Below, piece by piece: positions 41,168 through 50,067 of a stretch of 64,000 nt of DNA. Each line of letters opens with the position of its first letter. Position 1 is the stretch's first letter. The notes beneath the pieces were generated by a model, which saw only the letters and a list, made by a program, of their open reading frames with translations, did no database searches and was not told where the DNA came from. The position numbers and the translations under genes were made by a program. Where the stretch lies: sequence record NC_031120.1, one strand, 5' to 3'.

Positions 41168-41180
41168 CGAATATCTTTTC

Positions 41181-41202
41181 AGATAGATGTTATCAAAGTG
41201 AG
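41181..41202 (+). promoter_or_regulatory. putative early promoter
   Basis: AGATAGATGTTATC-AAA-GTGAG. Confidence 0.65.
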
Positions 41203-41279: not shown

Positions 41280-41732
41280 ATGTTCCAGAACTCCGTTGTG
41301 AGTGACGCTGAATTAAATCAGTTTCGTGAGCGAACGCAACTGATGATTGACAACGGCGACTTGGCTCGAAGCAAATTGAAAGACGTTATCGTCGAATTGC
41401 AAAAGGTCAAAGATATCGCTACCGTGTGGTCATGCGAGGGTTTAGTCCGCATCGAAAAGGGACGCCCTCGCACACGCCAACCCCATTACCTGACCTTCGT
41501 GGTCAATGAGAAGGGCCTCAAGCTGCTGGAAGTTATCTGGCAGGTATGGCAATCCGCTGATGACGGTGAACGCATGACCTTGTGCCTGCAACGCCAACAG
41601 CATCAAAATCGTCCGACCTCGTCGTATCCGGCCTGGACGTTTAAACTTAATCGTCGCCCTGACGATGATGTCGTTGACCGGGCATGCGGGTACTGGCTGA
41701 TGATGGCAAAAGTGATGTCAGCCCAATCCTAA
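41280..41732 (+). CDS. hypothetical protein
   Basis: ATG 41280 with GAGG RBS; 150 aa; TVWSCEG motif. Confidence 0.7.
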   Translation: MFQNSVVSDAELNQFRERTQLMIDNGDLARSKLKDVIVELQKVKDIATVWSCEGLVRIEKGRPRTRQPHYLTFVVNEKGLKLLEVIWQVWQSADDGERMTLCLQRQQHQNRPTSSYPAWTFKLNRRPDDDVVDRACGYWLMMAKVMSAQS

Positions 41733-41733
41733 A

Positions 41734-41758
41734 TTTTACGTGACCGTTCAATCTAATG
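41734..41758 (+). promoter_or_regulatory. TAC-N15-(A)ATG motif variant
   Basis: TAC 41737, AATG 41755; no upstream terminator hairpin. Confidence 0.45.
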
Positions 41759-41782
41759 TATACCCCACTGGAGAATAATAAC

Positions 41783-42391
41783 ATGCAATCCATCGCACGC
41801 CCACTCGACGTAGTCGCATTCCCTGAATTCACTGGCGCACAGATGTACATGAAGAAAGTGCTCGCCAAAGTTGCCCATCTGGTCGTGCCCTTGGCATACC
41901 GCCCTATGGTACGCAAGATGATTCTTGATGCGGGCATCGACAGTGGCCAGCATGTCTGGCTTACTATCGATGAATCTCGTGTTAAGAAAGGTCAGAAGCA
42001 CCGTCGTGGTGGTGCCCACATTGATGGCTGCTACGAAACCATGGGCTGGAATGGCTGGGGTGGCGGTGGTTGGTTGAACGGTGTGCCTGGTCGTATGCTG
42101 AATGCGGAAGAACATGCCCGTTCCTACCAGAACCCGAATGGCGGTATGATTATTGCCTCCAACTTCGAAGCCTGTCGTGTGTGGTTGGGAGATGTGGATG
42201 GTATCGCCGGACAAGGCGGTGACTGTGAGCACCTGCGTGACCAGTTCGATAACCTCGACACGTCGCTGATGGAAGCGAACCGTGTCTATCTCACTAACTC
42301 CACCTGTATTCATGAATCGCTGCCCTTAGCGCAGTCATTCAATCGTCAACTTATTCGTATCACTCTGTCCGAACACCATCAGTTCCAGTAA
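41783..42391 (+). CDS. 2OG-Fe(II) dioxygenase-like protein
   Basis: GAHIDG (HxD), CIHES (distal His), RQLIRI (2OG-binding Arg); ATG 41783 with GGAG. Confidence 0.7.
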   Translation: MQSIARPLDVVAFPEFTGAQMYMKKVLAKVAHLVVPLAYRPMVRKMILDAGIDSGQHVWLTIDESRVKKGQKHRRGGAHIDGCYETMGWNGWGGGGWLNGVPGRMLNAEEHARSYQNPNGGMIIASNFEACRVWLGDVDGIAGQGGDCEHLRDQFDNLDTSLMEANRVYLTNSTCIHESLPLAQSFNRQLIRITLSEHHQFQ

Positions 42392-42418
42392 TAGAATACC
42401 CCATTAGGAGAATCAAAC

Positions 42419-43054
42419 ATGGCCAAGAACAAGAAACCACGTAACAAAAAATATAGCCCGCAAGCAGCACACGCTGAGACCTCTCGCATGGTTGCAGAGA
42501 ATGCGTTAAACCGCATTGCTTTTATCGGTGCCTCTAACCGTCGCCTTCAGCCGTTTGGCGGCCGTGGTTTCCAGTATACCGTTTCCCGTGCTGTACGTGT
42601 CACCGTCAGTGCGGCCTTAGCGGAAACCCTCTTCGAAGATACCCGCACCTGGCAGTTGTGGATGTGTCACTATGCCAATGGTGAGCATGGTGTGGAAGCG
42701 ACCTCTGCGTTCTCGGTGTTGGAAGACTACACCCTGGGTGACTTTAACGAGCACATTCAGACGTTGGTCGACCACTCCCGCCCAGAAGACATTGCCGATG
42801 AAGACTATATCGGCTTTGCGTTCTTCTGTGCCCCGAATGACCGCTGGGACTTTAATGGTCCCGCTGATGAACGTTTGATTGAGAACTTCATGGCATCCGG
42901 TGTGTTAGAGAAAGAAGAGCACGTACCGATGGCGGTTTGGCCGGTGACTCGTGAGGAGCTTATCATTAAAATGATGGCTGACCACACGAAGTTTGATTCC
43001 AGTATCAAAATCCATCAGCGTGGTGAAGGCGATGACTACAAGCGTATCGACTAA
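42419..43054 (+). CDS. hypothetical protein with basic N-terminus
   Basis: 211 aa, AGGAG RBS. Confidence 0.8.
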   Translation: MAKNKKPRNKKYSPQAAHAETSRMVAENALNRIAFIGASNRRLQPFGGRGFQYTVSRAVRVTVSAALAETLFEDTRTWQLWMCHYANGEHGVEATSAFSVLEDYTLGDFNEHIQTLVDHSRPEDIADEDYIGFAFFCAPNDRWDFNGPADERLIENFMASGVLEKEEHVPMAVWPVTREELIIKMMADHTKFDSSIKIHQRGEGDDYKRID

Positions 43055-43595
43055 CTTCTGGAAACGGATTGTCCGTCTCTGGAAGAAACCGAGAGGGCCA
43101 GACTTTGGCCCGATTGTGCAGGCAGTGGAAGAATACTTCGAGGCAGGCCATCATGACGTGATGGCTTTGGCGGACTCCATGTACCTCACCCCGCGTGAGC
43201 TGTATTTCATGATGCCGAACGACAGCCTGCGTTGCAATATCCTGCCCGCGTTACCTGAAAAGGAACGTGAGGAGTTACGCAAGGAAATCTGTGCGCGGGT
43301 ATTTGACCGTAACAAAGTCCAATACCAGCTTCACCACATCAGCCCACAATTTCACGACCTCGGTGAGCTGGAGCATTTCCTGTTCATGCAACAGCACAGT
43401 GCTTTGCTGACGGAGGAACTTAACACGGTACCGCCCATCATTGGCACACCGTTCATTAGTCCACGCGGCGAACGCTCAATCCACTTGATTCTTGCCATCC
43501 CCGGCCATGACATGGACCTCGGTGTCATCAGCGGGTTAACGGATTCGCAAGAAAAATTGTTAATGGTGAAATATGGACAAGCTAACCCCAGTTGA
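43032..43595 (+). CDS. hypothetical protein
   Basis: ATG 43032; overlaps both neighbours by about 23 nt. Confidence 0.7.
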   Translation: MTTSVSTNFWKRIVRLWKKPRGPDFGPIVQAVEEYFEAGHHDVMALADSMYLTPRELYFMMPNDSLRCNILPALPEKEREELRKEICARVFDRNKVQYQLHHISPQFHDLGELEHFLFMQQHSALLTEELNTVPPIIGTPFISPRGERSIHLILAIPGHDMDLGVISGLTDSQEKLLMVKYGQANPS

Positions 43596-45312
43596 AATCG
43601 TTAGTGTCTTTGACCAATTTGTCTACGGGCAAGCACTGGCGAAAAAGATGCTGGCGATTGCTTTACGTAACCGTATTCGTATCGCGCAGCTCAGCCTGAA
43701 AGATCGCGGTTCGGTACGTAAACAAAACCTGCTGCTCATTGGGCCAACGGGTGTGGGTAAGACGGCACTGATGCGTGTACTGCGTAATCGTTTCGGCTTA
43801 CCGGTGTTAGAGGTGGACATGACCGGTTTCTCTGAGACCGGTTACGTGGGTCGTAACGTCAGCACCATCGGCACTGACCTGGCGAGCTTAGCCAAATCCA
43901 CCCCGTTACCAGAATGGTACATTACGTTGCGTACGGGGATGACGCTGGAGAAAGAAGAAAAGCGTCACACTCGTGAAGAGTGGGAAGCCTTACAGGTTAA
44001 AGAGAAAGAACAGCAATACGCGGAGGAGCAGACCGAACGTGAAAAGGAGAGGGCTGCGAAACGTGAGCACGAGATTCGTTTAACCAGCATGGGCATCCTG
44101 CCGGATGAGGAAGACTATAAGCGCATTCGCAAAGTGTTCTACATGCGGGCGTTTATCCTTGGTTACTGCCACATCAAAAACCTGCCGTTCGATGACATTG
44201 ACCTGCGTGAGATGGAAATCTTCCCAGGCCAGACCGTCGACGGTCTGGCGAAGCGTGCCCTCCAGCTGATGGAAACCGTCACTGGTCAGAAGTTCGATTC
44301 CATGGAATCGCTGGAGTCATTTGACAGCGATTTGGATCTCGAAGAGTCGGTTAGTGAGCATCCGCAGCTGATGGGTGAAATGATGGCGCTGCTTCCGATT
44401 GCCGAAACCATTTCGTCCATCATCGAACAAGGTCTTTCCCTGATGGGGAGCAATCCCGTTGCCGCTTGTGTATCCGGTAACGATTGGTTTGATGTGGCCT
44501 ATTCGTTCGACGGGGAAAAGCAGGATATTCCACCGGGCATCGGTTGGCGTTACTTCGACGACACCGAATGGCTCATTGGGTTAATGTTTGAGATCCTGTT
44601 CAACTACGACGAGCTGATGGAGACCTATTGGTCGGTAGAAGACTTCACCCAGTTTGCCGATGAGAAAATCTGGGCATACGACGTGAAGGCCGATAAGCCG
44701 AAGTGGAACAACCCAACCGGCGTACTCACCAAGAAAGACCTGCTGAAAGTGGATAACTGTAACGCACGGGATTTCGTGGAGAACTTCGCAGTAGTGTTCC
44801 TCGATGAGTTTGACAAGCTTATCGAAACTGATACGACCGGGCGCACGCATGTTTCGCGCAGTGGCGTACAGCGTAGTTTATTGAAAATGGTTGAAGGGGG
44901 ATTATACAGTGGGATTGACACAACCAATGTGCTTTTTGTCGCTGCTGGGACGTTTGCTGAAGCGCCTCTTTCTAAACTCTTACCCGAACTCCAGGGACGC
45001 TTCCCGTTAAGGGCGCAACTGGAACCGTTGGACATCCCGGCTATCGAGGCAATCTGTCGTCTTGATACCAGTGATTTCCACAGCATGATTAAACTGTTGT
45101 CCTTGGAAGGCGTCAAAGTTCGCTACGACGCTGACACGTACCTCTACATTGCCGAACAGACCATGTTGGCCAACCAGGTGGATAACTTGGGTGCCCGTCG
45201 TCTGGATGCCATCGTAGAACGTATCTTACAAGCTGCCCTTTACGAACCGGAGAAATACCTTGAACATGGATACGACATTACCGGAGCAACCCTCCGTGGA
45301 CTTGACGGTTGA
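43573..45312 (+). CDS. hslU: HslU/ClpY-like AAA+ unfoldase, C-terminally shortened
   Basis: GQ..AKK..AIALRNR, GPTGVGKT, ETGYVG pore loop, FLDEFDK, GVQR.LL..VEG, LF.AAG.F, PELQGRFP, NLGARRL. Confidence 0.9.
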   Translation: MDKLTPVEIVSVFDQFVYGQALAKKMLAIALRNRIRIAQLSLKDRGSVRKQNLLLIGPTGVGKTALMRVLRNRFGLPVLEVDMTGFSETGYVGRNVSTIGTDLASLAKSTPLPEWYITLRTGMTLEKEEKRHTREEWEALQVKEKEQQYAEEQTEREKERAAKREHEIRLTSMGILPDEEDYKRIRKVFYMRAFILGYCHIKNLPFDDIDLREMEIFPGQTVDGLAKRALQLMETVTGQKFDSMESLESFDSDLDLEESVSEHPQLMGEMMALLPIAETISSIIEQGLSLMGSNPVAACVSGNDWFDVAYSFDGEKQDIPPGIGWRYFDDTEWLIGLMFEILFNYDELMETYWSVEDFTQFADEKIWAYDVKADKPKWNNPTGVLTKKDLLKVDNCNARDFVENFAVVFLDEFDKLIETDTTGRTHVSRSGVQRSLLKMVEGGLYSGIDTTNVLFVAAGTFAEAPLSKLLPELQGRFPLRAQLEPLDIPAIEAICRLDTSDFHSMIKLLSLEGVKVRYDADTYLYIAEQTMLANQVDNLGARRLDAIVERILQAALYEPEKYLEHGYDITGATLRGLDG

Positions 45313-46042
45313 ATACCGTTTACCCGTACACCACACCGTTCGCGTAACGGGTATTGGTAGTGCGGATTTGAAATCGACCGACAGTGTCTGGGCCGAAGGG
45401 GAGCTGATCCGCTTGCCTATGGCGGCGTTGGCACCGGACGCGGATCTTGACAAGGTATTCCGTCGCTGGTTTGAAAACAACAGCAAGTGTGAAGTGAACC
45501 CGGTAAAGAACAACGTGGGGTGCTTCGAAAACCCGGCGCTGTTATTGAAGTTCCGTGAAGTGCAAGACCTCTACGTCGGGGCCTACCTCACCGAAGGTCA
45601 TCTGGATGTGGTGGATGGCGTGGTGATTATTAGCGGCAAGCTGAAACCGACCGGACGTTACGGTGAGAAGGTGCGCCGTTACATGACCCTGGTGGAAGAG
45701 ATTGCGATACGTCCGCGTTTCTTGGTGGATGCGAATGGGTTAGTGACCGGCGTTCCTACCTGGGACTTGGTGCTCCCGGAGCAATGGGAACTGACCTCTC
45801 GCGATCGTCAGCCGTTGTATAACGAACCGACCCATCCGGATTTCGTAAAGTCCCATGGCTTAATCCACGAACGTTGCAAAGAAGACGGGCTGGATTATGC
45901 GGTGAACTACGAAGAAGGTCTGGACATGTGGAACATCAGTATCCGCCCCATGGACCACGATAAATGGTTCAGAACGGGTGACGGTAATTTGTCGAGTGTA
46001 GTAGAAGAAGCTTTAGATCATTTAAATATCGTTGGGGATTAA
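45266..46042 (+). CDS. degenerate prohead-protease-fold protein (T4 gp21/phiKZ gp175-like)
   Basis: GCFENP, ISGKLKPTGRYG, AIRPR, TWDLV align to GE.GHP / G.VKP.GPYG / FSIRS / TWD.V; catalytic His and Ser missing. Confidence 0.5.
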   Translation: MDTTLPEQPSVDLTVEYRLPVHHTVRVTGIGSADLKSTDSVWAEGELIRLPMAALAPDADLDKVFRRWFENNSKCEVNPVKNNVGCFENPALLLKFREVQDLYVGAYLTEGHLDVVDGVVIISGKLKPTGRYGEKVRRYMTLVEEIAIRPRFLVDANGLVTGVPTWDLVLPEQWELTSRDRQPLYNEPTHPDFVKSHGLIHERCKEDGLDYAVNYEEGLDMWNISIRPMDHDKWFRTGDGNLSSVVEEALDHLNIVGD

Positions 46043-46043
46043 C

Positions 46044-46514
46044 ATGGAACAGAATAATAAGCGCGGGTTGGAAATCACGGGTCAGGGCGAAGACGTGGCG
46101 GGTAAGTTTTACACGGTGACGTTATTAGAAGTGGGTAAGATGCGGGCAGATGGGAAAGTGTACAACGGCGACATCAAGCATCTGATGCGTGGTATCAAGC
46201 GCATGCCGCGTGTCTTCTGTGAAGTCGATCCGTATCACGATCACCGTTTCCAAATCCCCATGGCAGACGATAAACACATCACGGCAGTCAGCTCCATCGA
46301 CACCAGAAACGTGTGTGCGGCCATTGAAGACCTGCGTCACGATATCCGGGCTGGTAAGCTGACGGCGAAACTCCGTCCGTGGGGACCGCATGCCCGGATG
46401 GTCAATGAGCTGATGGATGCGCGTAACCAGAACGTAACCTTCGGGATGCGTGCCTTGGCGACACCGTCTGGTGCGATTGACAAAGTAATTTGCTGGGATT
46501 TGCTGCCGGAATAA
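46044..46514 (+). CDS. degenerate prohead-protease-fold protein (T4 gp21/phiKZ gp175-like)
   Basis: G..Y, FCEVDP, IDTRNVCAAI, KLRPWGPH, NVTFGMRA, ICWDLLPE; FSIR Ser replaced by Gly. Confidence 0.6.
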   Translation: MEQNNKRGLEITGQGEDVAGKFYTVTLLEVGKMRADGKVYNGDIKHLMRGIKRMPRVFCEVDPYHDHRFQIPMADDKHITAVSSIDTRNVCAAIEDLRHDIRAGKLTAKLRPWGPHARMVNELMDARNQNVTFGMRALATPSGAIDKVICWDLLPE

Positions 46515-46535
46515 GGCAGTAACGAAAAGAAGCTC

Positions 46536-46557
46536 AGATAGATATTATCTTGATGAG
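46536..46557 (+). promoter_or_regulatory. putative early promoter inside an inverted repeat
   Basis: AGATAGATATTATC-TTG-ATGAG, flanked by AAGCTCA/TGAGCTT. Confidence 0.65.
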
Positions 46558-46591
46558 CTTCTGTTATTTCTTTTTTTCGAAAGGAGCAGCT

Positions 46592-46783
46592 ATGGCTGTG
46601 GTCTATTGGATGGTGCTAGTGGTCTCTGCGTTGTTCACCGGCATGAAGATTGCCCAAGTGCAGCAGTATTACAAAAAGCGCCGTAACCGTGATGCCCGTC
46701 AACAATTGATTGGCGCAGTGATTGCGCTGGTCTGTGGTGCGGCATTATTAGCATGGGCGTTGTATCAAATCTGGTCTAAATAA
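46592..46783 (+). CDS. small two-TM membrane protein
   Basis: ATG 46592 with AAGGAG; two hydrophobic helices around basic loop YYKKRRNRDAR. Confidence 0.75.
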   Translation: MAVVYWMVLVVSALFTGMKIAQVQQYYKKRRNRDARQQLIGAVIALVCGAALLAWALYQIWSK

Positions 46784-46805: not shown

Positions 46806-47840
46806 ATGTCTCGTATCTTAACCTTAACCGGCGGTCTGGATTCCACTTGGATTCTCAATAAGCTGATGAATCTGCCAGACGATCATCCGGCTGAACGAAT
46901 TTATCCGGTGTACCTGGATTTTAATCAGGGTGAGCGCGCTGCGTTTCTGGAATACCTGCTCAGCAGTGAAGCTGCACTGCGCATGTTAAAACAAACCCCG
47001 TGGTATAAACGTGAACTGGAATGGCGTTCTCCCGCGCCGAATATTTATAACTACGTTCTTTCCCGCCAGGATGCCAACACCCGCTTGGTGCAGCAAGGCA
47101 ACGTGGTCATGTGTCTGGCTAATGTGGTGAATGACCAATTGTGTCGAGAACAAGGAGTAACTGCATACGTCGGCTGGAACAAAGGCGATTGTATCGAGCG
47201 TAACTGGACGCGCGGTGAGTACAACGAGGACGACTACGACCGTCTGCGTCGGATGTACGAAGACCTGGTCTATTTCCAAGACCATGGCTACCGTGTCCAT
47301 CCGTTACTGACCCCCGCATGGGATAAGACCAAGCATGAGATGTGGAAAGAGCTGCCGCCAGAAGTTCGTCAGTTCATTACCGTTGCGCCGCATTACGCTA
47401 TTCACTATTTACCGTGTCCAGAACTCGACGTCATCTATATTTACATCAAAACTGAGCAATGCGCGAAATACATTCGCTACCGTGAGCAGGGGATTGAGCT
47501 GTCTGTAGCATGGCGCATCAGTACGAACAACGCGTTTTGGGATCGTGTCCAACAATCCACTTGTCCAATTAACCGCGAAGGTTACGGTATATCAAAACAA
47601 ATTGGTATCCCTAGCGAGCGGAAGAAGGAAGACTACCAAATTGGGCCCCTGCGCTTGAGGGCGGAAGACGATCCGCTTATTATCAAAGCCTACACGAAGG
47701 AAGAGTGGGATGAATACTCTCCAAAGCTTGAGCAGTACATCGATCAGCGCGAACGCGAAGCCCAGGCTCGAGCTGTGGACGGTGCAGATGGCGAAGTGGC
47801 GCAAAGTACATCTGCTACTGCCACCGGTCCGGCTGCTTGA
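46806..47840 (+). CDS. PP-loop ATP pyrophosphatase, QueC-like, divergent
   Basis: LTGGLDS PP-loop, YLDFNQG..A..E, GWNKGD, PL....K..MW; QueC Zn-binding Cys cluster not evident. Confidence 0.65.
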   Translation: MSRILTLTGGLDSTWILNKLMNLPDDHPAERIYPVYLDFNQGERAAFLEYLLSSEAALRMLKQTPWYKRELEWRSPAPNIYNYVLSRQDANTRLVQQGNVVMCLANVVNDQLCREQGVTAYVGWNKGDCIERNWTRGEYNEDDYDRLRRMYEDLVYFQDHGYRVHPLLTPAWDKTKHEMWKELPPEVRQFITVAPHYAIHYLPCPELDVIYIYIKTEQCAKYIRYREQGIELSVAWRISTNNAFWDRVQQSTCPINREGYGISKQIGIPSERKKEDYQIGPLRLRAEDDPLIIKAYTKEEWDEYSPKLEQYIDQREREAQARAVDGADGEVAQSTSATATGPAA

Positions 47841-48144
47841 CATCACCGTTAAAAGCGGCATGAAAATATTCGCCCCGACCTGGGACTTCCTGATGGAGTA
47901 TAAAAACTCCAACAAGGATGCCGAGGCCGAGGCGGTGTATACCCGGAAGTTTCGGGCGAAGATTCGACAGCTGTATCGGGATAATCCCGATGCACTGTTA
48001 GAACTGTTATACAGCGAGCGCTTAGCGCTGATGTGTTATTGTCCGGCAGGCAAATTCTGCCACCGTCATTTATTAGTCCGTACCCTACGAGCACTCGGGC
48101 GTCTACACGGCGTCGATGTTGTCTTGATGGGCGAAATTACCTAA
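47710..48144 (+). CDS. DUF488-like protein (start uncertain, overlaps upstream gene)
   Basis: LWTVQMAKWRK, DITVKSG..IFAPTW, ALMCYC..GKFCHRHLL. Confidence 0.65.
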   Translation: MNTLQSLSSTSISANAKPRLELWTVQMAKWRKVHLLLPPVRLLDITVKSGMKIFAPTWDFLMEYKNSNKDAEAEAVYTRKFRAKIRQLYRDNPDALLELLYSERLALMCYCPAGKFCHRHLLVRTLRALGRLHGVDVVLMGEIT

Positions 48145-49140: not shown

Positions 49141-50067
49141 GTGAATAAAGAACCGTTAATCATCGTTCCCCTGTTTGAAGAAAATATTCCCGTCCGTGAC
49201 CCGACCGTACAGACGATGTTGTGTATGCTGCGTAAAGCCTACACGCTGGCGTACCGTAAGCGCCACCGTATTACCATCGGCCTTATCCCGGCGACCCCAC
49301 AGGCAGTCAGTTTTGTCTGTGACCTAGGCCTGTACGGTTATCTGGCACTGAGCAAGCTCAAGAAAGATACGCCAGAAGCCCTGGAAATCATTCAGATGCT
49401 GAGCGACATGTACAAAGAGTTCACCACCGGCGAGAAGAAGACCTATCGCCACACGGACATGATGTACAAGCTCGCATGTGAAGACGAAGGCTTCGGGTTA
49501 CGCCGCTCCCTTATCATGCAGAAACCAAGCCCCACGCCGATGTTGTACCATTTAGAAGAAAACGTGGGTGAGAAGGTACAGAACGATGGCTTCTGCGGTC
49601 AGCAGAACCTCGGTGATATCTACCTGACCACCACCAACAACCTACCTGAGGCCATGAAGCGGGAACTGGCTGAGGTATTGTGTCGCTGGAACATCGGCAG
49701 AAACCATGTCTTTGACCAAGCAGATATGGATATTATCCCCTCCGCCGCCTCGGTCATTGTGGATTGGGAAGGGAATGGCGTTTACCGTGTGACGTTACAT
49801 GCCGTGGGTGGTGATGTTTCTGACCTGGCATTGCGCATGATAAAAGCACGGTTGCTGGGTAAATCCGACCGTGGCTGTTCGTACCATATCGAAGGCAAGG
49901 GTCAAATGTTTGTTGAAATCGACAGCATGAAGAACCCTTCCAACGCCCAGCCAACCATTATTGAAATGGTGCGGCTTGGCATCCAGAACAATGTGGTTCA
50001 CACGGTTCTCGACATTTGTGCCAAGCGCTACGAATGCGAAATCGTCTTGAAGCCCCGTAAGAAGTAA
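49141..50067 (+). CDS. hypothetical protein (paralog of 48157 gene)
   Basis: 308 aa, GTG start with AAGGA RBS. Confidence 0.75.
   Translation: MNKEPLIIVPLFEENIPVRDPTVQTMLCMLRKAYTLAYRKRHRITIGLIPATPQAVSFVCDLGLYGYLALSKLKKDTPEALEIIQMLSDMYKEFTTGEKKTYRHTDMMYKLACEDEGFGLRRSLIMQKPSPTPMLYHLEENVGEKVQNDGFCGQQNLGDIYLTTTNNLPEAMKRELAEVLCRWNIGRNHVFDQADMDIIPSAASVIVDWEGNGVYRVTLHAVGGDVSDLALRMIKARLLGKSDRGCSYHIEGKGQMFVEIDSMKNPSNAQPTIIEMVRLGIQNNVVHTVLDICAKRYECEIVLKPRKK

What the first reader, a model, noticed from the sequence alone, without database searches (positions are those of the whole stretch)
45266..46514. Two tandem catalytically dead prohead-protease-fold genes directly behind an orphan HslU
Seen: both ORFs carry, in order, motifs matching the T4 gp21/phiKZ gp175 head-protease scaffold (46044: FCEVDP, IDTRNVCAAI, KLRPWGPH, NVTFGMRA, ICWDLLPE; 45266: GCFENP, ISGKLKPTGRYG, AIRPR, PTWDLV). 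Known: that family uses His in GE.GHP and Ser in FSIRS/SSRG; both are replaced here. The first gene overlaps the hslU stop by about 50 nt and the pair ends just before the next early promoter, so they look co-transcribed with hslU. Inference: a module in which pseudo-proteases act as substrate adaptors (binding A-x-E propeptides), decoys or docking partners for an AAA+ unfoldase that has lost its HslV tail; a possibly undescribed head-maturation or protein-remodelling system.
Basis: partly seen in the sequence, partly recalled or inferred. Interest (0 to 1): 0.8.

Follow-up and report, generated by a model that had tools for sequence, protein, structure and literature searches.

The report
Dead prohead-protease paralogs beside phage HslU
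Two neighbouring genes of the giant Erwinia phage Caitlin are old, catalytically disabled copies of the phage's own head-maturation protease; they were already noted in print in 2017, and their position next to an HslU-like ATPase is not kept outside the closest relatives.

Summary
The window is Erwinia phage vB_EamM_Caitlin (Machinavirus). gp128 (45266-46042) and gp129 (46044-46514) follow the HslU-like gp127, and both descend from the S80 (phiKZ gp175 / SPN3US gp245 / T4 gp21-fold) prohead protease. The evidence is solid for gp129 and indirect for gp128.

Both have lost the catalytic His and Ser but keep the Asp, Arg and Glu of the pocket. The real protease is gp257, outside the window, 79% identical to the validated SPN3US gp245.

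The paralogs are not new. Ali et al. 2017 (PMC5694885) described SPN3US gp117 as a diverged protease homologue and stated that Machina, Caitlin and ChrisDB carry two.

They belong to a wide family of short S80 paralogs. Of 39 representatives, 6 keep Ser, 4 keep His and all keep Arg and Asp. Both Caitlin genes are under purifying selection (dN/dS 0.04-0.14).

Linkage to HslU holds only in Machinavirus-like phages and a few others. Elsewhere each occurs without the other, and one close relative lacks gp128.

The HslU lacks the bacterial C-terminal tail, but the genome does encode an HslV-family peptidase (gp1).

The adaptor-for-HslU idea is neither excluded nor supported. Function is unknown; my best guess is non-catalytic, non-virion binding proteins.

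The parts
41180..41194 (+). Promoter-like 15-nt motif upstream of gp123; probable start of the gp123-gp129 transcription unit
   Evidence: The pattern CAGATAKATRTTAYC occurs 9 times in the window against 0.34 expected, 8 of them on the + strand. The copies checked against the gene map lie in intergenic gaps.
41280..43595 (+). gp123-gp126, four genes of unknown function in the same tightly packed + strand block
   Evidence: Gaps are 50, 27, -32 and -23 nt, with no terminator-like site between genes. PHROGs assigns only families of unknown function.
43573..45312 (+). gp127, HslU-like AAA+ ATPase (579 aa) with an enlarged I-domain and no bacterial-type C-terminal tail
   Evidence: PDB HslU hits reach E 3e-49. 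TIGR00390 scores 213 bits, below its 362-bit cut-off. Walker A, Walker B and the GYVG pore loop are invariant, and the protein ends 12-15 residues before Salmonella HslU.
45266..46042 (+). gp128 (258 aa; 260 aa from TTG 45260): type-A pseudo-protease, overlapping hslU by 47-53 nt
   Evidence: phrog_24315 2.3e-139 and phrog_7478 2.4e-7. hhalign to the gp129 family gives E 2.4e-7. Ser is replaced by Arg149, there is no His, and D167 is kept. dN/dS is 0.13-0.14.
45383..45775 (+). S80-like core of gp128 (about aa 40-170)
   Evidence: The gp128-family HMM matches the short type-A proteins of Kwan, Stratton, SPAsTU and SPN3US gp117 over this part. The hhalign match covers aa 72-169.
45812..46027 (+). 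C-terminal small alpha/beta domain of gp128 (aa 183-254), a stand-alone ORF in other phages
   Evidence: phrog_31164 4.7e-10. It matches Phobos gp126 (82 aa) and a 73-aa stretch at L025:5775-5993 lying between HslU and the gp129 type. It is duplicated in P0016.
46044..46514 (+). gp129 (156 aa): type-B pseudo-protease, named 'head maturation protease' in RefSeq
   Evidence: Pfam PF20034 E 3.6e-8. hhalign to the true proteases gives 97.4%. T4 gp21 is the top PDB fold hit. Ser is replaced by Gly134, the His column is a gap, and D152 and R136 are kept. dN/dS is 0.04-0.11.
46518..46578 (+). Hairpin plus U-run after gp129, overlapping a second copy of the promoter-like motif (46535-46549)
   Evidence: RNA fold -19.8 kcal/mol, z -3.0; motif; sequence.

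Best explanation
gp128 and gp129 are two anciently duplicated, catalytically inactive short paralogs of the phage's S80 prohead protease. The working protease is gp257, elsewhere in the genome.

Shown: they keep the core of the protease fold and the non-nucleophile pocket residues (Glu74, Arg155 and Asp178 equivalents). They have lost the Ser nucleophile, the His base and the whole C-terminal region. In SPN3US gp245 that region is removed by autoprocessing and is inferred to target the enzyme into the prohead. They belong to the widespread family of short S80 paralogs of giant phages first reported as SPN3US gp117. They are kept by purifying selection, but their copy number changes between close relatives.

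Inferred: they work as non-enzymatic, cytoplasmic (non-virion) binding proteins that use the old substrate cleft. They are made from a non-structural transcription unit (gp123-gp129) together with the HslU-like ATPase.

A dedicated partnership with HslU is possible in Machinaviruses but is not a property of the family.

The confidence of 0.6 is for the whole statement. The identity part (inactive S80 paralogs, not the head maturation enzyme) I put at about 0.85, and the binding-protein mechanism at about 0.35.
For: Homology and lost residues.

Fold.

True protease: gp257 matches Pfam S80 at 1.4e-85 and is 79% identical to SPN3US gp245. It, gp128 and gp129 are the only S80-like ORFs found in the whole genome.

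Family breadth: 51 representative clusters were found. Of the 39 short ones, Ser is kept in 6, His in 4 and the full triad in 1, while Arg155 and Asp178 are kept in 39 of 39.

Purifying selection: dN/dS is 0.04-0.14, similar to HslU at 0.11-0.16.

Non-virion status: SPN3US gp117 is absent from the virion mass-spectrometry table, whose rows jump from gp109 to gp122.

Prior description: PMC5694885.

Transcription unit.
Against: No biochemical or expression data exist for the Caitlin proteins.

The binding-protein mechanism is inferred only from which residues are kept.

dS is about 1, so the dN/dS values are rough.

The link of gp128 to the protease family is transitive, through gp129.

Foldseek support against PDB is modest for gp129 (TM 0.41) and absent for gp128.

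The virion evidence comes from a different phage, concerns only the type-A paralog, and rests on one table of amber-mutant particles.
Confidence: 0.6

Rival explanations
1. One reading: the pseudo-proteases are substrate adaptors, decoys or docking partners of the tail-less HslU-like unfoldase, and together they form a protein-remodelling module.
For: There is a tight arrangement: a 47-53 nt overlap of hslU with gp128 and 1 nt between gp128 and gp129.

The order HslU then paralog(s) is kept in the Machinavirus-like records, in pEa_SNUABM_29 and in the contigs L017, L020, L021 and L025.

In SPAsTU the two paralog types flank HslU.

The phage HslUs lack the bacterial C-terminal tail.
Against: The paralog family is much wider than HslU. 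SPN3US, Stratton, Asesino, PCH45, 201phi2-1 and Phabio have short paralogs, and the first three gave no strong HslU hit (E <= 1e-25) anywhere in the record.

HslU occurs with no paralog found in the flanks examined in phage 1252 and Phobos.

Kwan has them apart and in the other order.

gp128 is missing in the close relative L017.

Four other unrelated genes share the same unit.

These phages are broadly syntenic, so adjacency may simply be inherited.
Confidence: 0.15
2. The paralogs regulate the true protease gp257. A dead subunit would pair with the enzyme, or occupy its substrates, in the cytoplasm and hold back cleavage until the enzyme is inside the prohead.
For: They share the fold and keep the pocket residues. 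They lack the C-terminal targeting region, so they should stay outside the prohead. gp117 is not seen in virions.
Against: There is no evidence that S80 proteases form the needed hetero-oligomers. Copy number runs from 0 to 3 between related phages that all have one conserved protease, which is odd for a core regulator. The genes lie far from the head module.
Confidence: 0.15
3. They are decaying remnants of a duplicated or truncated protease gene with no present function. This is the 'potential protease remnant' reading of Ali et al. 2017.
For: The catalytic residues and the C-terminal region are lost. Presence and absence vary between relatives. PMC5694885 raises this reading.
Against: The ORFs are intact in all relatives examined. 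dN/dS is 0.04-0.14. Arg155 and Asp178 are invariant in 39 of 39 short representatives. Both lineages are old and shared across several genera.
Confidence: 0.05
4. They are still active proteases that use relocated residues, for example His65 two residues downstream in gp129, or conserved cysteines.
For: gp129-type proteins of Machinaviruses keep a His in PYHD. Cys59 and Cys91 are invariant in type B. The SPAsTU 161-aa type-A paralog keeps the full H/S/D triad, so some family members may be active.
Against: The nucleophile position is Gly or Ala in all 16 type-B sequences and Arg in all 9 gp128-type sequences. His65 is absent from the SPAsTU, Asesino and Stratton type-B proteins. The cysteines are not family-wide.
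Confidence: 0.03

Closest known systems
SPN3US gp117 and its homologues (diverged paralogs of the prohead protease; Ali et al. 2017, PMC5694885)
   Same: Same family. The gp128-family HMM hits gp117 at E 1.3e-8. Both are short, lack the C-terminal region, lie in the same syntenic non-structural region and lack the aligned His. The paper states that Caitlin has two homologues.
   Different: gp117 keeps the Ser (S-126), whereas gp128 has Arg and gp129 has Gly at that position. gp128 carries an extra C-terminal domain. SPN3US has no HslU beside gp117.
MEROPS S80 / Pfam PF20034 prohead proteases (phiKZ gp175, SPN3US gp245, Caitlin gp257)
   Same: Homologous core, with Glu74, Pro131, Arg155 and Asp178 equivalents kept.
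   Different: There is no Ser nucleophile, no His and no C-terminal autoprocessed region of about 85 residues. The genes are not in the head gene module. The type-A relative is absent from the one SPN3US virion table read.
T4 gp21 capsid assembly protease (PDB 5jbl; herpesvirus-protease fold)
   Same: It provides the top three PDB fold matches of the gp129 model.
   Different: The match is weak (TM about 0.4, 12-13% identity) and the catalytic Ser and His are absent.
Bacterial HslVU (ClpQY) protease
   Same: gp127 is a clear HslU homologue with an intact ATPase and pore loop. gp1 is an HslV-family Ntn peptidase that keeps the N-terminal Thr.
   Different: The genes are about 105 kb apart in the record. 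The I-domain is about twice as long and the C-terminal tail is missing. HslV-like genes are found in 72 phage records, including phages without HslU.

Membership tests
Peptidase S80 (PF20034) prohead protease | Significant match to the family profile | tested here: met
   gp129 scores 33.3 bits against a 23.4-bit cut-off, E 3.6e-8, but covers only profile positions 54-174 of 229. gp128 has no Pfam hit and is linked only through the gp129 family (E 2.4e-7).
Peptidase S80 (PF20034) prohead protease | Catalytic triad His-Ser-Asp (H77, S153, D178 in gp245 and gp257) | tested here: not met
   gp129 has gap/Pro, Gly, Asp. gp128 has Pro/Asn, Arg, Asp. The true proteases are invariant H/S/D.
Peptidase S80 (PF20034) prohead protease | C-terminal region removed by autoprocessing and inferred to target the enzyme to the prohead | tested here: not met
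   gp129 ends at the equivalent of gp257 residue 182. The gp128 C-terminal domain did not align with the protease tail. The role of the tail is taken from PMC5694885.
Peptidase S80 (PF20034) prohead protease | gp21 / herpesvirus-protease fold | tested here: inconclusive
   The gp129 model has T4 gp21 as its top three PDB hits, but at E 8e-3 and TM 0.41. The gp128 model gives no PDB hit but does hit prohead proteases in BFVD at E about 3e-5.
Peptidase S80 (PF20034) prohead protease | Encoded in the head module and present in proheads or virions | tested here: not met
   The genes lie in a block of unknown, non-structural genes. The true protease gp257 lies between a virion structural protein gene and a hypothetical gene, in the terminal region that also holds the terminase and tail-sheath genes. 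SPN3US gp117 is absent from the virion mass-spectrometry table. There are no particle data for Caitlin itself.
Short S80 paralogs of giant phages (gp117-like, Ali et al. 2017) | Short (about 125-195 aa) diverged homologue of the phage's own prohead protease, encoded apart from it | tested here: met
   Reciprocal HMM hits join gp128, gp129, gp117, Kwan gp144 and Stratton gp135/gp136. The literature states that Caitlin has two such homologues. gp128 is longer only because of a fused C-terminal domain.
HslU (TIGR00390) | AAA+ core with Walker A, Walker B and GYVG pore loop, and an I-domain inserted at the canonical site | tested here: met
   PDB HslU hits reach E 3e-49. The motif residues are invariant in the alignment with Salmonella HslU. 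The TIGR00390 score of 213 is below the equivalog cut-off of 362.
HslU (TIGR00390) | C-terminal tail that docks into HslV | tested here: not met
   All six phage HslU-like proteins end 12-15 residues before the bacterial C-terminus, and their ends are not conserved. The docking role of the tail is established knowledge and was not tested here.
HslU (TIGR00390) | Encoded next to hslV | tested here: not met
   The only HslV-like gene is gp1 at record 1-498. In Phobos, HslV gp123 lies 2.3 kb upstream of HslU.

The most novel reading that the evidence does not exclude
The short dead paralogs could be a family of cytoplasmic bait-binding proteins that keep the prohead protease's substrate cleft. 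One version: they protect cleavable host or phage proteins from the true protease. That could include the activation loops of CBASS CD-NTases, which a 2026 preprint (PMC12991175) reports are triggered by cleavage by T4-type prohead proteases. This would make them a new kind of anti-defence decoy. Another version, for Machinaviruses: they hand bound proteins to the tail-less HslU-like unfoldase. The variable copy number under purifying selection would fit an arms-race gene.
Probability: 0.07. Interest if true: 0.75.

Novelty: already known. Interest (0 to 1): 0.3.

Why it matters
It corrects an annotation. RefSeq names gp129 and its homologues 'head maturation protease', although they lack the nucleophile; the real enzyme is gp257.

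It shows that the 2017 'protease remnant' is one member of a large, selected family of pseudo-proteases in giant phages. That family keeps the pocket residues Arg, Asp and Glu but not the catalytic Ser and His. This turns an oddity into a defined open question: what does a dead prohead protease bind?

It also shows that the attractive HslU-pseudo-protease module is mainly a feature of one clade's gene order. It should not be treated as a system without expression or structural evidence.

Tried and rejected
- Direct sequence search of gp128 and gp129 against PDB chains found nothing meaningful.
- NCBIfam has no model for any of the three S80-like proteins.
- I suspected that SPN3US gp116 or gp117 might hold an HslU N-terminal remnant, because residues 1-68 of gp127 hit some SPN3US-like records. 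BLASTP shows no similarity, so I rejected this. I did not locate those short hits.
- I looked for a second HslV near hslU in Caitlin, as in Phobos and as reported for pSal-SNUABM-04. None was found.
- The IMG/VR scan for more loci returned only 6, five of them phages already seen in the GenBank search and only L025 new. A wide co-occurrence statistic could therefore not be made.
- The sigma-70 promoter scan was at chance level (8 found, 8.7 expected) and was not used.
Full report
**What the window is.** The region 43500-46600 is 100% identical to Erwinia phage vB_EamM_Caitlin (NC_031120.1, 241,147 bp, genus Machinavirus). Window position equals record position minus 62000. The record's taxonomy line names no family, so the phage is not filed under Chimalliviridae.

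The ORFs in question are:
- gp127: 43573-45312, 579 aa.
- gp128: 45266-46042, 258 aa. The homologues start one codon pair earlier, which matches TTG 45260.
- gp129: 46044-46514, 156 aa.

**Checking the observation: gp129.** gp129 is a clear relative of the S80 prohead proteases.
- Pfam Peptidase_S80 gives E 3.6e-8, above the curated cut-off, covering profile positions 54-174 of 229.
- phrog_7478 'head maturation protease' gives 3e-52.
- A profile of 16 gp129-type proteins aligns with a profile of 19 true proteases at probability 97.4%, E 1.3e-11.
- The AlphaFold2 model (pLDDT 80.6, pTM 0.74) has the T4 gp21 protease (5jbl) as its three best PDB matches. These are weak (E 8e-3, TM 0.41).

**Checking the observation: gp128.** gp128 is further away.
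- It has no Pfam hit.
- Its comparison with the true proteases is not significant (E 0.13).
- It does match the gp129 family (93.4%, E 2.4e-7, residues 72-169) and phrog_7478 (2.4e-7).
- Its model (pLDDT 77) finds short giant-phage proteins and annotated prohead serine proteases in BFVD (E about 1e-5 to 1e-4). It finds nothing in the PDB.

**The real protease and the lost residues.** The whole Caitlin genome, read in pieces, holds three S80-like ORFs only. The third is gp257 (record 219396-220199, outside the window). It is a full-length S80 protein (Pfam 1.4e-85) and is 79% identical to SPN3US gp245, the genetically and biochemically validated prohead protease (PMC5694885).

In 19 true proteases H77, S153 and D178 are invariant. 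These are the triad positions published for gp245.
- In gp129 the His column is a gap or Pro, Ser is Gly134 and Asp is kept (D152).
- In gp128 there is no His, Ser is Arg149 and Asp is kept (D167).
- The Gly (or Ala) is found in all 16 type-B sequences. The Arg is found in all 9 gp128-type sequences.

So 'catalytically dead' is well supported by sequence. It has not been tested biochemically.

**This is already in the literature.** Ali et al. [quoted passage not shown]
- It describes SPN3US gp117 and its homologues in Erwinia phages.
- It says in so many words that there are two homologues to gp117 in Machina, Caitlin and ChrisDB.
- It also names 201phi2-1 gp206 and PhiPA3 gp143.
- It discusses the gene as a potential protease remnant.

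The paper does not mention HslU. It reports that gp117 still has the Ser and Asp.

**What I can add on the family.** There are two old lineages.
- Type A: Caitlin gp128, Machina gp130, Kwan gp144, Stratton gp135, a 161-aa SPAsTU protein and SPN3US gp117.
- Type B: Caitlin gp129, Machina gp131, Asesino gp132, Stratton gp136, a 148-aa SPAsTU protein and a PCH45 protein.

Residue loss is progressive. SPAsTU-161 still has H/S/D, Stratton gp135 and gp117 keep S/D, Kwan has V/V/D, and the Machinavirus type A has Arg at the Ser position.

A profile search of 1.84 billion representative proteins found 51 clusters. Tallies:

| Group | n | Full H/S/D | Ser kept | His kept | Arg155 | Asp178 | Glu74 |
|---|---|---|---|---|---|---|---|
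| Long (242-311 aa) | 12 | 9 | 9 | 9 | 12 | 12 | 12 |
| Short (126-193 aa) | 39 | 1 | 6 | 4 | 39 | 39 | 36 |

At least two of the three long non-H/S/D proteins carry the S80-like part at the C-terminal end of a longer protein.

The pocket is therefore conserved without the chemistry, which is the usual signature of a pseudo-enzyme that still binds something.

dN/dS against three close metagenomic relatives is 0.13-0.14 for gp128 and 0.04-0.11 for gp129, against 0.11-0.16 for HslU. dS is near 1, so these values are rough. These are selected genes, not decaying remnants.

gp128 is a fusion. Its C-terminal 75 residues form a small alpha/beta domain that is a separate ORF in Phobos (gp126) and in a UViG, L025. 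In L025 it sits alone between HslU and the gp129 type.

**The HslU link.** gp127 is a real HslU homologue.
- PDB hits reach E 3e-49.
- Walker A, Walker B and the GYVG pore loop are intact.
- Its I-domain is about twice the bacterial length.
- Like five other phage HslUs, it ends 12-15 residues before the C-terminus of Salmonella HslU.

It is not an orphan in the genome. gp1 (record 1-498) belongs to the HslV family (phrog_1040, 2.3e-37). It starts Met-Thr-Thr and keeps the Asp, Lys and Gly-Ser-Gly positions in the alignment with Salmonella HslV.

That HslV-like gene occurs in 72 phage records, including phages without HslU such as SPN3US, Asesino and Stratton. Even this pair is therefore not obligate.

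**Gene order in relatives.**

| Phage or contig | Arrangement |
|---|---|
| Caitlin, ChrisDB, Machina, pEa_SNUABM_29 | HslU, type A, type B |
| L020, L021 | HslU, type A, a 109-113 aa ORF, type B |
| L017 (gp129 94% identical) | HslU, type B, with no type A |
| L025 | HslU, small domain only, type B |
| SPAsTU | type A, HslU, 67-aa ORF, type B |
| Kwan | type A, three genes, HslU |
| Salmonella phage 1252 | HslU in the slot where SPN3US has gp117; no paralog found in the flanks |
| Phobos | HslV, several genes, HslU; no paralog found in the flanks |
| SPN3US, Stratton, Asesino | paralog(s), no HslU |
| PCH45 | type-B paralog, no HslU in the 4-kb flanks |
| 201phi2-1, Phabio and other phiKZ-like phages | one to three short paralogs |

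The two gene families thus come and go independently. Adjacency is a feature of one clade of syntenic genomes.

**Transcription.** A 15-nt motif occurs 9 times in the window against 0.34 expected. It lies at 41180, before gp123, and at 46535, right after gp129. From 46518 there is also a hairpin with a U-run (-19.8 kcal/mol, z -3.0).

Between these marks seven genes (gp123-gp129) are packed with gaps of -47 to +50 nt and no terminator-like site between genes. Co-transcription of hslU with the two paralogs is therefore likely. It is shared with four unrelated genes, so it says little about a specific partnership.

**Where the proteins are.** In the one SPN3US particle mass-spectrometry table read, which covers three amber-mutant preparations, the rows go from gp109 to gp122. 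gp117 is not listed. The 'virion structural protein' labels on some homologues probably come from similarity to gp245, which carries that label in the SPN3US record. There are no data for Caitlin itself.

**Most likely mechanism.**
- Shown: these are non-catalytic copies of the prohead protease core. They lack the C-terminal tail, are under selection, sit in a non-structural unit and vary in copy number.
- Inferred: they are cytoplasmic binding proteins that use the retained Arg/Asp/Glu cleft.

Who they bind is open. The candidates are substrates of the true protease, the protease itself, host proteins, or clients of HslU. I put the HslU-adaptor model at about 0.15, the protease-regulator model at about 0.15, pure remnant at 0.05 and residual activity at 0.03.

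The most novel reading not excluded is an anti-defence decoy. A 2026 preprint reports that CBASS cyclases are switched on by cleavage by T4-type prohead proteases (PMC12991175).

**Verdict.**
- Novelty: already known, since the two Caitlin homologues are named in the 2017 paper.
- Interest is modest.

Noticed in passing
NC_031120.1 record 1-498 (L002:1-498), outside the window: gp1 is an HslV-family Ntn peptidase (phrog_1040, 2.3e-37) starting Met-Thr-Thr. Homologues occur in 72 phage records, including phages without HslU such as SPN3US, Asesino and Stratton.
   Followed up: partly
window 46550-46783 (gp130): The annotated TTG start lies inside the promoter-like motif and hairpin. ATG 46592, preceded by a GGAG, would give 63 aa, the size of the gene that follows the gp129 orthologue in L017 and L018.
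   Followed up: partly
window 2947, 9988, 10791, 23583, 33854, 41180, 46535, 54201 (+ strand) and 49612-49626 (- strand): The 15-nt motif CAGATAKATRTTAYC occurs 9 times against 0.34 expected, 8 times on the + strand. It is probably a phage-specific promoter. Its expression class is unknown.
   Followed up: partly
L012:1495-1980 (Salmonella phage SPAsTU): A 161-aa type-A paralog keeps the full His/Ser/Asp triad and ends 12 nt before the HslU gene, in the peptidase-then-ATPase order of bacterial hslVU. It may be a second, active, tail-less protease.
   Followed up: no
L014:4001-5761 (Salmonella phage 1252) compared with L011:5185-5670 (SPN3US gp117): Between the same flanking genes (the gp116 and gp118 homologues), phage 1252 has an HslU gene where SPN3US has the protease paralog gp117.
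   Followed up: no
window 46044-46514, and homologues in Machina, Huxley, ChrisDB, Kwan, Asesino and phiEaH2: RefSeq names these short proteins 'head maturation protease', although those examined lack the nucleophile. The true protease in Caitlin is gp257.
   Followed up: yes
window 43890-44760 (gp127 residues about 107-396): The I-domain of the phage HslU is about 290 residues, roughly twice the bacterial one. It starts with a highly charged Glu/Lys/Arg-rich stretch and is longer still in Phobos.
   Followed up: no
window 47710-48144 (gp132): This ORF matches Pfam DUF488-N3a (E 1.4e-11). The same family follows the gp129 orthologue in L017 and L018.
   Followed up: no
L020:2902-3231 and L021:3093-3434: In two close relatives a 109-113 aa ORF with no detected relatives sits between the gp128 and gp129 orthologues. 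It is absent from Caitlin.
   Followed up: partly
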